In this document: positions 25,678 through 29,670 of the stretch, piece after piece
How the letters are laid out: each line of letters begins with the position of its first letter
How positions within the stretch are numbered: position 1 is the first letter of the stretch
Origin: Camelus ferus
Taxonomy: Eukaryota
Assembly (NCBI RefSeq): GCF_009834535.1
Contig: NC_045716.1
Location: 24,614,001 to 24,678,000, forward strand
DNA length: 64,000 bases
Direction of reading: 5' to 3'
Notes under the pieces: generated by a model
The model's database searches: none
What the model was told of the DNA's origin: nothing
The model's input: only the letters and a program-made list of their open reading frames with translations
Position numbers and translations under genes: made by a program

Positions 25678-26392
25678 GTAACAAGGGAATGGGGAGAGGT
25701 TGATATGGGATTATGGCCTTGAACTATGCCCCTTTTTGAAAGTTCAAGCTGGAGGCATAGCAAAATACTCTATGGGAAGCAAGAATCTAGGATTCTAGTC
25801 CCGGTCGCAGGCTGCATAAATCTGAGGCCTGGCATTTCAGATCTCTGATCTAGGCTCCTCTGTCTTTATGCTTAGCAGATTGCTCTTCACTGGGATGGGA
25901 GATACACGGTCTTAAGATTTACTTGGGGGGCTTTTTCCAAAAACCCTAACCTTCCTTTCTATTAATTAAAAACTGCTATCTCAGCACCACAGTAAATTGT
26001 ATTGTGTTCGGGAGTGTTGGGACAGGAAAAGGTCTGAGCACCTTTGTCCTTTGATGTCTTGTATGCATTTCTGCCCTCAAAACAAGGGAAATGGGCTTGG
26101 AGCTAGTGAAGGAGTCTTCACCAATTATGAAACTCAGATAAATATGAGAGAGTCCTTTGTGAGGAAATCTTATTAGTAAAAAACCCTTTTTCTCTCATCC
26201 TCATGAGGGTCAGTGTGAAGGGAGGCACTGAGACTTCCCTTGGAGGAATGGAGGTTAGTTTTTACCATTTCAGATTGATTTTGTGGTCAAGGAGCTGGAG
26301 GCACGCCTCCTCTTTGCTGGAGGGCGCAGGGGAGGTCTCTTACTGTGCCGTATGGAGACTTGGGAGAGGGTCTCACATGTGCCTTTTCACAG

Positions 26393-26467
26393 ACAGGTGC
26401 CGTTCAGGAGCAGATGAGATCCAAGGGAAACCGAGACAGGCCGTGGAGCAATTCTAGGGGCTTGTAG
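26393..26467 (+). CDS. CDC42SE1: CDC42SE1 coding exon 3 (stop codon); exon ends at 26481
   Basis: cag|ACA GGT GCC...GGC TTG TAG; TGAVQEQMRSKGNRDRPWSNSRGL*; donor G|GTGAGT at 26482; total 79 aa. Confidence 0.96.
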   Translation, partial: TGAVQEQMRSKGNRDRPWSNSRGL

Positions 26468-26629
26468 CTCCAGCAGGAATGGTGAGTGATTAGAGAAACC
26501 CATCTTACGCCTCTAGCCTCCTGCCAGCACATTGTGATTCCCTGCCTCAGAACCCTGATCCCCTGCAAGAATGGGAAGTGAACGGAGGGAAAAAGAATTA
26601 GAATAGAAGAGGCAAGAATGTAGGGTCCA

Positions 26630-27184
26630 TATAACAGCGAGAAAAGAACTGAACAAAATAAACTATGCGTCCAGTATTTAATTTTGATATTAAATAATTG
26701 AACCCCAGATATTTAAGCTCAAAAGAAGACTGTCTTGATAGAGCCCCTATATTTTATTGGATGAATTTATATTCTATAAAATGGAATGAAATTGAGAAGG
26801 TCTATGATTTTGCTGCGACTAAATTTGGTGAAACAAAAAGTTATAAGGACAACTTAGTTGATGAGTTTCTTAAAATAAATCTGTCAAGTTAATTTTGACT
26901 GAGGGGGGAAAAGGATGGTATCTTTGAACATGAACATATTTAAGATAAAATTTATAAATAAAATTCTAAATTGAAAATATATTCAATTTAATAAAGTTAT
27001 TACCAATTTACTAGGCTTTTTAGCAGTTTACTTAATTAAAAATTATCTGCCTACAGAGAAGAGTTAATTGGAAGTGTCATGTATTTCAAATTGTTAATCA
27101 TAAAAATACATCTTTAAACACAGGTAACTATTTTGTAAGCCATCAATATAATAAAACTTGTTGGTCAATCAGTTAAAAAAAAAA
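26630..27184 (+). pseudogene. Retroposed poly(A)-tailed RNA fragment, parent unidentified
   Basis: AT-rich 555-bp insert; AATAAA 27150-27155, A-run 27175-27186; flanking direct repeats AAGAATGTAGGGTCCA 26614-26629 and AAGAATGTAGGATCCA 27185-27200 (15/16 identical). Confidence 0.72.
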
Positions 27185-27359
27185 AAGAATGTAGGATCCA
27201 GAAGGGCAAAGAGAAAGGGATGTGCAGGCAGAAATAGAAATAGAAAAAAGAGCATAATGTAGAAATAGTTAAGAGTCTGAACCAGGTGGTGCCTTCTGCC
27301 TGAGGCTGGAGGTTTTCTTCGAGGCTAATCTTTCTTGTTTTTCTTTTTTTTAAAATCAG

Positions 27360-29670
27360 GTTCTACTGTGTGTCCAGCCTCCACCCTGTCCAGCCCAGAA
27401 GAGATGCTGCCCCCACCAGATGCCCTCCTAGAATCAGTGACCCCAGGGCCCCTCTTTTCCCTGACTAATAGTGCCTCACAAGGCGTGGGGGCTGGACTCC
27501 CTCCCCTCCCTCTGGCTGTAGCCCCTCCTGGAGATGGGGTCAAGGCAGCAGGACTGACCAGGTGACTACTGGTTGGCCAGAGGAGCTCAGCTGGGGCCTC
27601 GACACTCTCAGATCTGAGATAGGAGTTTTCTGGGAACCTGGAATGGGTTCCTTTCTCCTGAATGATGGTCTAGGTGCCATATGTTTTTAAACTCTTAACC
27701 TGAAACTCCTTAAATGTGGTGGGTGAGTGAGATTATGGAAGCTGAAGCCGGCTTTGCTGAGAAGCTCCCTCCCTCCCTGCCCTTTCCTCCTGGAATGAAC
27801 TGAAGCAGACGTCAGCCAGGGGCTGGGCGGGTGACCACTAGCTAGTCTACTCTCTCTCTCTAGATCTCTGACTTACAGTCCCTCAGTAGCTCTCTGCCAA
27901 TACAGGGTCTTTTTCTAGGTAGGCCTCTAACCCTGTTTCTGTAGCATAGCTAGCTCCCTAAGAGCTTTCCTTTTTTTTACAAAAAAATACTTTTTTAAAT
28001 TCGACTTCTCTTAATTACCCCCATCCTGCTACTACCTCTTCCTTAATCCTGTCCCTGTTAGGAACCTTACTGTTTCCCACTGGATAAGAGTTAAGCTAAG
28101 AGGTGGATCTTAACCTGAAGACATTCCATGTAAGTTTTGGGGATCTGGCCTACCCTCTGCCAACCTCCTTGCTGGCCTAAGTGAGAGCAGGAAGAGGGAT
28201 CTGGAGAGAAACCCAGAACGCAGCCAAACTAGGAGGTATGTCTCAGGGTGTACTATTGATCACTGAGGATGGGAGGGCTGGTGAGATAAACGGGTTGACA
28301 ACAATCATTGAGTGAGCTTAAGATCCTTACAGCATGGGAGCAGAAAGACCTCTAGAGCAAGGNNNNNNNNNNNNNNNNNNNNNNNNNNNNNNNNNNNNNN
28401 NNNNNNNNNNNNNNNNNNNNNNNNNNNNNNNNNNNNNNNNNNNNNNNNNNNNNNNNNNNNNNNNNNNNNNNNNNNNNNNNNNNNNNNNNNNNNNNNNNNN
28501 NNNNNNNNNNNNNNNNNNNNNNNTCACCCCCAGGGGAGAGCCACTGCTCTAGAGTCAAGGTATGTTTCTCTTGAGTGATTTCCACTTACTCATCCTAAGC
28601 CTGAGCCACGGATGAACTAGGGTTCCTTGTAAAGTAGGCTCAGGGGGCCGCACATAATCTCCAAACTTCTTTATTCCATGTGCTGCCTGTGCTTGCGTGG
28701 GTTCATGTCTCTACGATGGACATGTACTGTGCTCCATTCTTAATGCTCTCTGGAGGAGGGGTTCCTGCAGGGTGGAGGCCTGGACAGGATATCGTGGGAT
28801 TATGGAACAGAAGGAGAGAAAAGCAGTAGAGTTGCAGATACCCCAGCTTATCCTCCCCAAATTTTAAGCTCTGTATCTGTGCCGTAGTCCTAGAATCAGA
28901 CACAAATAAGACTCAGGGAGTTTTGTCTGAAGACCAGGTCCCACTCTCCACCTGGCTGAGGAGTCTGCTTTAGGTGGGAAAATAATGTAGGAGCAGGGTC
29001 ATTAGGCACTTTCAGTTTTCTCAGGTGTTTTTTGTTCTGACCCCTTCCTTGCAGGGTGACTGAGGGGCAGAACAGGACAGATGAGCTTCTGCCTGCTCCA
29101 TGAGAAGGTGGTCTCATTAGCTTGGTAACAGGAAGCATCCTGTCTGATGGTAGTGGGGGTCAGGAATGTGGGAATTAGGATCCACTCTGCTGATTCCACT
29201 ATCCATCCAGTTCACCCCCTCCTGTAGTGACTGAGGCGCTCATCTTTTGGAACCTCCGTGTATTTCCTGCAGGTTTTTAGTGTCTAAGCTTGGTCATAGA
29301 AATACATTCCCAATTTATTCAGTTCCGGTCTAGCTAATTGCTCTGAAGGTAGCTCACCTTGTTGCCCTAAATTCTCTCAAAAGCCTGAGGGTTACACTAG
29401 ATCTAAAGGGTTAACAGGATAGGGTAGACAGGTGGGGGCCTCCTGGAATCTGGTCATCCTGATCTTGAGCCTTATTCTGATGCCTGCTCTTTGGACACAA
29501 TCTTCTTTTCTTTGGTGCTCTCTCACCTTCAGCTGCCTTCTCTAATGTGTATGCTGCCATCACTTTAACAGTATTTAGAGTGATGGGAATGGGTTTGAGA
29601 GTCATAATTTATATTAAAAATTGTTGGACTTTTAAATACATTTTCAAATAAAAAATGTTTAAGCAAAACA
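27360..29670 (+). other. CDC42SE1: CDC42SE1 terminal 3'UTR exon
   Basis: Long pyrimidine tract then aatcag|G at 27360; AATAAA 29647-29652 followed by a GT-rich stretch; 3' end approximate; spans N gap 28363-28523. Confidence 0.72.
28363..28523. other. Assembly gap (N run) in the CDC42SE1 3'UTR
   Basis: 161 N. Confidence 0.99.

What the first reader, a model, noticed from the sequence alone, without database searches (positions are those of the whole stretch)
26614..27200. Orphan retroposed poly(A)+ RNA in the post-stop intron of CDC42SE1: a possible 3'UTR swap
Seen: a 555-bp AT-rich insert (26630-27184) that does not resemble any L1, SINE or LTR I recognise. It ends in AATAAA (27150) followed about 20 nt later by an A-run, and is bracketed by 16-bp direct repeats with one mismatch. 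It carries further sense AATAAA at 26874, 26957 and 26990. Established: a TSD plus poly(A) tail is the signature of L1-mediated target-primed reverse transcription of a cellular RNA or of a 3' transduction. Inference: this intron starts only 14 nt after the CDC42SE1 stop codon, so cleavage inside the insert would give the full 79-aa protein with a roughly 0.7-kb borrowed 3'UTR. That mRNA would lose the 2.3-kb native 3'UTR and its probable antisense overlap with MENT. I could not identify the parent gene.
Basis: partly seen in the sequence, partly recalled or inferred. Interest (0 to 1): 0.7.

Follow-up and report, generated by a model that had tools for sequence, protein, structure and literature searches.

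The report
Retrocopied transposase fragment in CDC42SE1 intron
A 555-base insert in a camel gene's post-stop intron is a real reverse-transcribed RNA copy, but its source is the tail end of an old hAT "jumping gene" transposase, and public RNA data show reading straight through it, so it looks like an ordinary passenger, not a new gene ending.

Summary
A 555-bp, 26% GC insert (26630-27184) ends in AATAAA (27150) and an A12 tail. It is bracketed by 16-bp direct repeats matching 15/16 (26614-26629, 27185-27200). It lies in the 878-nt CDC42SE1 intron that begins 14 nt after the stop codon.

It is not an orphan. From its first base to its poly(A) signal it is homologous to the 3' third of a hAT-superfamily transposase reading frame:
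- 78-80% DNA identity to a longer fossil copy at a different locus in ruminant contigs;
- 62-64% identity to copies in other eukaryote contigs that carry the hAT C-terminal dimerisation signature.

So an L1-type reverse-transcription event copied a 5'-truncated, polyadenylated RNA read from a dead DNA transposon.

The 3'UTR-swap idea gets no support. Two contigs from RNA libraries of two studies run without a mismatch through the A-tail into the downstream intron. The terminal AATAAA now faces a T-poor downstream sequence. The site lies within 700 nt of a 5' splice site. Contigs cannot show RNA ends, so the idea is unsupported, not refuted.

The verdict is an ordinary retrocopy with a mildly unusual source.

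The parts
26393..26481 (+). Last coding exon of CDC42SE1; stop TAG at 26465-26467, followed by 14 nt of 3'UTR
   Evidence: Translation TGAVQEQMRSKGNRDRPWSNSRGL*; GTGAGT follows at 26482. The gene name rests on my memory of the protein.
26482..27359 (+). 3'UTR intron, 878 nt; 307 nt before the insertion
   Evidence: GT at 26482 and polypyrimidine tract plus AG at 27358-27359; lengths.
26614..26629 (+). Upstream copy of the target-site duplication, AAGAATGTAGGGTCCA
26630..27174 (+). Retroposed body: a 5'-truncated copy of the 3' third of a hAT-type transposase frame, decayed by frameshifts, stops and small deletions
   Evidence: 62-64% DNA identity over q1-534 to L001-L003. 78-80% identity to L004/L005. 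Alignments A2 and A5. Protein hits P0001-P0023.
26698..26892 (+). Longest surviving open stretch (64 codons) of the transposase frame
   Evidence: phmmer finds 9 relatives with E-values from 3e-7 to 9e-4. The profile search finds 20.
27047..27106 (+). Remnant of the hAT C-terminal dimerisation motif (LPTEKS*LEVSCISNC*S*K, against family ...STEKSQLKVSTISNLLTIKCNF). The ER-FS core just upstream is lost in a 14-nt deletion.
   Evidence: Frame translations; alignment A2 columns 490-600. Pfam and atlas hits on the matching pieces of L001 and L003.
27150..27155 (+). AATAAA used by the source RNA. It aligns with AATAAG near the end of the transposase frame in related copies.
   Evidence: A2 columns 637-645.
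27175..27186 (+). A12 tail; its last two A also belong to the repeat
27185..27200 (+). Downstream copy of the target-site duplication, AAGAATGTAGGATCCA

Best explanation
An L1-type endonuclease and reverse transcriptase nicked the bottom strand of the CDC42SE1 3'UTR intron at ...CATTCTT/GCC. It primed on the poly(A) tail of an RNA and copied its last 545 nt before stopping (5' truncation). Repair duplicated 16 bp of target.

The RNA was read from a decayed hAT-superfamily DNA transposon of the ZBED5/FAM200/GTF2IRD2-like group, or from a transcript containing such a fossil. It had been cleaved about 20 nt after an AATAAA lying in the last codons of the transposase frame.

The insert is a passenger. 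It lies in an intron after the stop codon, is spliced out with that intron, and appears in RNA libraries only as read-through (pre-mRNA or retained intron).

Shown: the anatomy, the homology, the read-through contigs. Inferred: L1 as the enzyme, the parent locus, the lack of function.
For: Retroposition marks:
- A12 tail, AATAAA 20 nt before it, and a 15/16 repeat of 16 bp. It is the only such flank repeat among the 19 long A/T runs in the window.
- The repeat starts AAGAA, so the nicked strand ends in TTCTT, a loose match to the L1 TTTT/AA preference (read from the sequence; the preference is established knowledge).

Sharp boundaries:
- Homology to L004 starts within the first bases after the repeat, and the upstream flank does not align.
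- Homology to L001-L003 ends at the poly(A) signal, while those copies run on for about 350 bp more.

hAT source:
- Related copies carry, in order, an NNTNTNFGG...GCGTHVIHN block, a GSTRFLSLV block and LSLPVTSAPIERVFSEL.
- Pfam Dimer_Tnp_hAT matches at E=0.002 and E=0.066 in two copies, at the right place.
- Atlas feature search gives Dimer_Tnp_hAT clusters at 0.95 (203/256 features) and FAM200/GTF2IRD2/ZBED5 clusters at 0.93.

A longer copy elsewhere:
- L004 extends about 680 bp further 5' and has unrelated flanks.

Passenger status:
- RNA contigs X17 (26973-27282) and X19 (27068-27218) cross the tail with 0 differences.
- The 50 nt downstream of the terminal AATAAA are 12% T.

The insert is real and not an assembly error:
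- All sampled words are held by 16 DNA or unclassified runs under two organism labels.
Against: - The parent locus in the camel genome was not found. The one DNA run laid showed no second copy at 80% likeness or more, though a filter drops records and even this locus's own contig was missing.
- The Pfam hits are below the gathering score (18.2 and 13.5 bits, against 21.4).
- AlphaFold plus Foldseek and the PDB sequence searches gave nothing.
- No empty orthologous site could be examined.
- Four RNA runs hold 62-84% of the insert's words, more than the two laid contigs explain. The upstream part of the insert is therefore also in RNA libraries, in a form I could not see.
Confidence: 0.75

Rival explanations
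1. Orphan L1 3' transduction. An active L1 lay upstream of the hAT fossil in the source locus. Its transcript read through into the fossil and was polyadenylated at the fossil's AATAAA. On insertion it was truncated so far that no L1 sequence remains. The enzyme and outcome are the same; only the origin of the RNA differs.
For: The insert has every mark of L1-mediated insertion and no L1 sequence. Its source is non-genic repeat DNA, which needs a promoter from somewhere. Orphan transductions with target-site duplications are well described for L1 (PMC7058536, found; its content as I recall it).
Against: In the ruminant copy (L004), at least 680 bp upstream of the truncation point is still hAT fossil. 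I recognised no L1 in the 786 bp before that. That is another species, though, and the L1 could be lineage-specific or further upstream. The camel parent locus was not seen.
Confidence: 0.2
2. 3'UTR swap. Cleavage at one of the insert's AATAAA signals yields a CDC42SE1 mRNA with the full 79-aa frame and a short borrowed 3'UTR, in place of the native 2.3-kb one.
For: Five sense AATAAA and two ATTAAA lie in the intron. The one at 26874 has some GT/T-rich sequence downstream. The position after the stop codon would leave the protein intact. Four RNA runs from two studies hold 62-84% of the insert's words.
Against: - Both laid RNA contigs bridge the tail into the downstream intron.
- The number of AATAAA is about what 26% GC predicts.
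- A retrocopy does not bring the downstream element of its parent's poly(A) site, and the new downstream sequence is purine-rich (12% T).
- All signals lie 175-670 nt from the 5' splice site, within the range where U1 snRNP suppresses premature cleavage (established knowledge; e.g. PMC10404622).
- Intron words in RNA-seq are expected from pre-mRNA or intron retention.
Confidence: 0.07
3. A hAT fossil that reached the intron by cut-and-paste transposition or is ancestral there, with the A-run and flanking repeat arising by chance.
For: The sequence is derived from a DNA transposon.
Against: - There are no terminal inverted repeats and no 8-bp duplication.
- The copy starts in the middle of the frame and ends at a poly(A) signal about 350 bp short of the element's end in related copies.
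- A 16-bp repeat at exactly the two homology boundaries has a chance of about 1e-5 (and my arithmetic).
Confidence: 0.02

Closest known systems
Processed pseudogenes and retrocopies made by L1 (target-primed reverse transcription)
   Same: Poly(A) tail, upstream AATAAA, 16-bp target-site duplication, 5' truncation, T-rich nick site, insertion in AT-poor host DNA without its own promoter.
   Different: The template is not a mRNA of a cellular gene, as far as can be seen. It is RNA read from a decayed DNA-transposon (hAT) transposase frame, and no parent with introns is available for comparison.
Orphan L1 3' transductions
   Same: A unique, non-L1 sequence with tail and duplication, and no recognisable L1 part.
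   Different: No L1 was seen next to the related ruminant copy, and the camel source locus is unknown.
hAT superfamily transposons, ZBED5/FAM200/GTF2IRD2-like (Buster/Charlie-type) group
   Same: The related copies carry the CxxH-type block, the R-[WF]-x-S block and the C-terminal ...P.ERVFS... dimerisation motif in the canonical order. The insert keeps decayed remnants of the last part.
   Different: The insert did not move as a hAT element: it has no inverted terminal repeats and no 8-bp duplication, and it has a poly(A) tail. Whether it matches a named Repbase/Dfam family could not be tested here.
Intronic polyadenylation sites supplied by transposable elements
   Same: Sense-oriented, AT-rich insert with several AATAAA in an intron.
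   Different: No evidence of use. Because the intron follows the stop codon, use would change only the 3'UTR.

Membership tests
L1-mediated retrocopy (processed insertion) | 3' poly(A) tail preceded by a poly(A) signal | tested here: met
   A12 at 27175-27186; AATAAA at 27150.
L1-mediated retrocopy (processed insertion) | Target-site duplication of about 7-20 bp directly flanking the insert | tested here: met
   16 bp matching 15/16 at 26614-26629 and 27185-27200; unique among the 19 long A/T runs in the window.
L1-mediated retrocopy (processed insertion) | Nick site resembling TTTT/AA on the primed strand | tested here: inconclusive
   The bottom strand reads ...CATTCTT/GCC. The 3' end is pyrimidine-rich, but a G follows the nick in place of an A (read).
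L1-mediated retrocopy (processed insertion) | A source sequence elsewhere that extends beyond the copy's 5' end (truncation) | tested here: met
   The ruminant contig L004 carries the same sequence at 78-80% identity with about 680 bp more hAT homology upstream and unrelated flanks. The camel source itself was not found.
L1-mediated retrocopy (processed insertion) | Empty orthologous site with one repeat copy in an outgroup | not testable with these tools
   No mammalian genome collection is available. The metagenome scan gave only chance hits.
hAT superfamily transposase (source sequence) | C-terminal hAT dimerisation domain (Pfam PF05699) | tested here: inconclusive
   Below the cut-off but consistent: E=0.002 (18.2 bits, cut-off 21.4) in L001:6431-6709 and E=0.066 in L003:4267-4521, both on profile positions 33-81 of 84. 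Atlas features score 0.95 with 203/256 shared against Dimer_Tnp_hAT clusters.
hAT superfamily transposase (source sequence) | RNase-H-like catalytic region with the CxxH and RW blocks upstream of the dimerisation domain | tested here: inconclusive
   GCGTHVIHN and GSTRFLSLV blocks are present in the right order in L001. The atlas places L001:5735-6001 in FAM200/GTF2IRD2/ZBED5 helical-domain clusters at 0.93. No Pfam hit. The motif reading rests on my knowledge.
hAT superfamily transposase (source sequence) | Terminal inverted repeats and 8-bp duplication around the element | tested here: not met
   Not met for the insert in the window: it begins mid-frame, ends in a tail and has a 16-bp duplication. 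The insert is therefore a copy of hAT-derived RNA, not a hAT insertion. Not examined for L001-L004, which are fragments.
Named mammalian repeat family (Repbase/Dfam) | Match to a curated consensus | not testable with these tools
   No repeat library is available. Rfam and the tRNA scan found nothing.
Functional intronic poly(A) site (3'UTR swap) | RNA 3' ends with non-templated A inside the insert | not testable with these tools
   Only contigs were available, and they cannot show ends. The two laid contigs read through the tail.

The most novel reading that the evidence does not exclude
In camels the insert gives CDC42SE1 a lineage-specific alternative 3' end, or a small 3'UTR cassette exon (27057-27123, AG...GTAACT), used in some tissues. 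The reproductive-tract RNA libraries hold most of the insert. A dead DNA transposon, moved by L1, would then have rewired the 3'UTR of a conserved gene without touching its protein.
Probability: 0.07. Interest if true: 0.4.

Novelty: new member of a known kind. Interest (0 to 1): 0.15.

Why it matters
It matters little. The case shows that the L1 machinery also copies RNA read from dead DNA transposons, and that a post-stop intron is a tolerant landing place for a sense-oriented, AATAAA-rich insert. It also serves as a caution: a unique insert with tail and duplication that matches no L1, SINE or LTR need not be a cellular mRNA. A protein-level search identified the source family where DNA recognition failed. 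If the insert proves absent from New World camelids or other artiodactyls, it could serve as a clade marker.

Tried and rejected
1. Pfam on the window's 64-codon frame and on several family members gave nothing, or only a chance DUF1413 or APOBEC_C hit.
2. PDB sequence searches, with one piece and with a five-row profile, gave only chance hits.
3. The AlphaFold2 model of a 137-residue family piece from a 19-row alignment was poor (pLDDT 70, pTM 0.32, all helices). Foldseek against the PDB gave no match with E below 6. This is not evidence about the fold.
4. The metagenome scan for a 20-mer shared by the window and the ruminant copy returned two contigs with no further similarity, so they are chance hits.
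5. The contig of P0017 (an NCBI record) was withheld.
6. I tried to name the host of contigs L001-L003 through the RTE-like LINE frame in L001. There were 7970 or more hits, all unnamed JGI proteins. Contig L008 (104 kb, same sample as L003) shows only one Nop52 exon.
7. Read laying on DNA run X2 to find the parent failed. Only 18-45-nt chance pieces were laid, and the locus's own contig was dropped by a filter, so the blank says nothing.
8. The second run search, on a control intron (25690-26385), was meant to show whether other species hold the flanks but not the insert. The list was filled by 20 runs of organism A, so it gave no information.
9. Rfam and the tRNA scan of 26400-27400 found nothing. 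The bacterial promoter and terminator scan is irrelevant here.
10. I kept the reads tools on intron sequence only, to stay clear of conserved exons. The N runs were left untouched.

Full report
**1. What is there.**

- An AT-rich block (26630-27184, 555 bp, GC 0.26) sits in sequence of about 50-56% GC.
- It ends in AATAAA (27150-27155), 19 further bases and an A12 run (27175-27186).
- AAGAATGTAGGGTCCA (26614-26629) recurs as AAGAATGTAGGATCCA (27185-27200).
- I scanned all 19 A or T runs of at least 10 bases in the window for a 16-mer directly after the run that recurs upstream with at most one mismatch. The scan found only this case. By my arithmetic the chance for this run is about 1e-5.
- The insert has no second copy in the window.

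The gene context is also as stated.
- 26393-26467 translates to TGAVQEQMRSKGNRDRPWSNSRGL*. I recognise this from memory as the end of CDC42SE1.
- Fourteen bases after the stop comes GTGAGT (26482). The acceptor AG is at 27358-27359.
- The intron is 878 nt, 307 nt without the insert.
- From established knowledge, a junction 14 nt after the stop is too close to trigger nonsense-mediated decay.

**2. What the insert is.**

One frame stays open for 64 codons (26698-26892). Pfam does not recognise it. An exhaustive phmmer search against 1.8 billion representative proteins found nine relatives with E-values from 3e-7 to 9e-4. A profile search found twenty. All are short unnamed frames called on eukaryote contigs. 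The alignments show that the ancestral frame runs on in both directions past the window's stops.

I fetched the contigs behind four of these proteins (P0008, P0012, P0002 and P0001).

*Contigs L001-L003* come from three JGI metagenome samples.
- They match the insert from base 1 to base 528-534 at 62-64% DNA identity.
- They match one another at 77-80% over up to 1.35 kb.
- In the four-way alignment the window's copy stops at its AATAAA. This aligns with AATAAG 8-26 codons before the end of the frame in the other copies. Those copies continue for about 350 bp to a common end.

*Contigs L004/L005* come from ENA assemblies and carry two SINEs that I recognise from memory as ruminant Bov-tA.
- They match 26634-26825 and 26819-27079 at 78-80% identity, interrupted by one of those SINEs.
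- Their flanks do not match the CDC42SE1 intron.
- Their homology to L001 continues about 680 bp further 5' than the window's insert.
- The 5' boundary of homology falls at the first bases after the upstream repeat.

**3. The family is hAT.**

In L001 the frame pieces carry, in order:
- ...GNNTNTNFGG...GIGCGTHVIHN...
- ...GSTRFLSLVPVIHRILEMF...
- ...LSLPVTSAPIERVFSELVILRSTEKSQL...LTTKC....

From my knowledge these correspond to the DN..N/CxxH block, the RW block and the C-terminal dimerisation motif of hAT transposases.

Tool support:
- Pfam Dimer_Tnp_hAT matches at E=0.002 in L001 and E=0.066 in L003, on the same profile positions. Both are below the curated cut-off.
- The atlas feature search puts the C-terminal piece in Dimer_Tnp_hAT clusters (0.95, 203 of 256 features, recognition above the usual threshold).
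- It puts the middle piece in FAM200/GTF2IRD2/ZBED5 helical-domain clusters (0.93). A first query had already given the same families as weaker leads.

The structure prediction and the PDB searches added nothing.

The window's insert keeps a decayed remnant of the dimerisation motif at 27047-27106 (LPTEKS*LEVSCISNC). The ERVFS core is lost in a 14-nt deletion.

**4. How it got there.**

A hAT element moves by cut and paste, with inverted ends and an 8-bp duplication. This copy instead starts in mid-frame, ends in a poly(A) tail 20 nt after AATAAA, stops about 350 bp short of the element's end, and is flanked by a 16-bp duplication whose first bases are AAGAA. The nicked strand therefore ends in TTCTT.

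That is the signature of target-primed reverse transcription by the L1 machinery acting on a polyadenylated RNA. The RNA was read from a hAT fossil. It came either from an independent transcript or from an L1 read-through (orphan 3' transduction). I could not separate the two, because the camel source locus was not found.

Timing is only loosely bounded.
- The 78-80% identity to the ruminant copy is about the neutral camel-ruminant distance (my estimate). It fits any date after that split.
- One mismatch in 16 between the repeats argues against a pairwise divergence above about 0.3 (binomial, my arithmetic).
- All sampled words of the insert are held by 16 DNA or unclassified runs under two organism labels. 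The insert is therefore real and shared by two closely related taxa.

**5. Does it change the CDC42SE1 3' end?**

- It laid two informative RNA-library contigs. X17 covers 26973-27282 and X19 covers 27068-27218. Both have no differences, and both have more than 31 bases on each side of the A-tail.
- These molecules read through the putative cleavage site into the downstream intron. This is expected for pre-mRNA, a retained intron or contaminating DNA.
- Four RNA runs from two studies hold 62-84% of the insert's words. More of the insert is therefore present in those libraries than was laid. The tool drops contigs that match human DNA, so contigs joined to the conserved exon may have been hidden.

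Nothing speaks for ends inside the insert.
- The terminal AATAAA lost its parental downstream element on retroposition and now faces purine-rich DNA (12% T in the next 50 nt).
- Five AATAAA against two expected is what 26% GC gives.
- All signals lie 175-670 nt from the 5' splice site, where U1 snRNP is known to suppress premature cleavage (established knowledge; see PMC10404622).

I think it better explains why a sense-oriented, signal-rich insert was tolerated at this spot than it argues for a function.

**6. Comparison and verdict.**

The insert works like, and meets the tested criteria of, an L1-mediated retrocopy. Its template belongs, with good but sub-threshold support, to the hAT superfamily. 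Whether it matches a named mammalian repeat consensus cannot be tested here.

It is a new member of a known kind, with the small curiosity that the copied RNA came from a DNA transposon. Earlier notes of this scan say the genome is a camel's and that it carries domesticated hAT genes (ZBED10, ZNF862). None of the protein searches linked the insert to a full-length gene, so I do not propose either as the parent. The scan holds no other note on this stretch except the same finding.

Interest is low. The 3'UTR swap remains possible but unlikely, and needs 3'-end sequencing.

Noticed in passing
L001:5300-6990, L002:4400-5730, L003:3890-4770, L008:10001-10198: A moderately young hAT family, with copies 77-80% identical to one another, occurs in eukaryote host contigs of three JGI metagenome samples (3300042591, 3300042609, 3300042621). 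It is still 61-65% identical in DNA to the camel and ruminant fossils over up to 0.94 kb. Atlas relatives are mostly arthropod, and the neighbouring LINE looks arthropod-like to me from memory. My rough distance arithmetic does not call for recent horizontal transfer.
   Followed up: partly
L001:4381-4797: An intact 139-codon C-terminal piece of an RTE-like LINE frame lies next to the hAT copy. It has at least 7970 relatives at E below 1e-10, all unnamed JGI proteins. It is a very high-copy, recently active LINE in that host.
   Followed up: partly
L004:1660-1785 and 300-510 (the same locus appears reversed in L005): The ruminant copy of the hAT fossil is split by a Bov-tA-type SINE. The gene caller fused the two into the chimeric 80-residue frame P0001, which is what first linked the window to ruminant DNA.
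   Followed up: yes
window 27057-27123: Inside the insert, a weak acceptor (ctgcctacAG) and a good donor (CAG/GTAACT) frame a possible 67-nt pseudo-exon in the 3'UTR. The X17 contig covers it unspliced, and there is no evidence of use.
   Followed up: no
The count is in line with the AT richness of the insert.
   Followed up: yes
   Followed up: no
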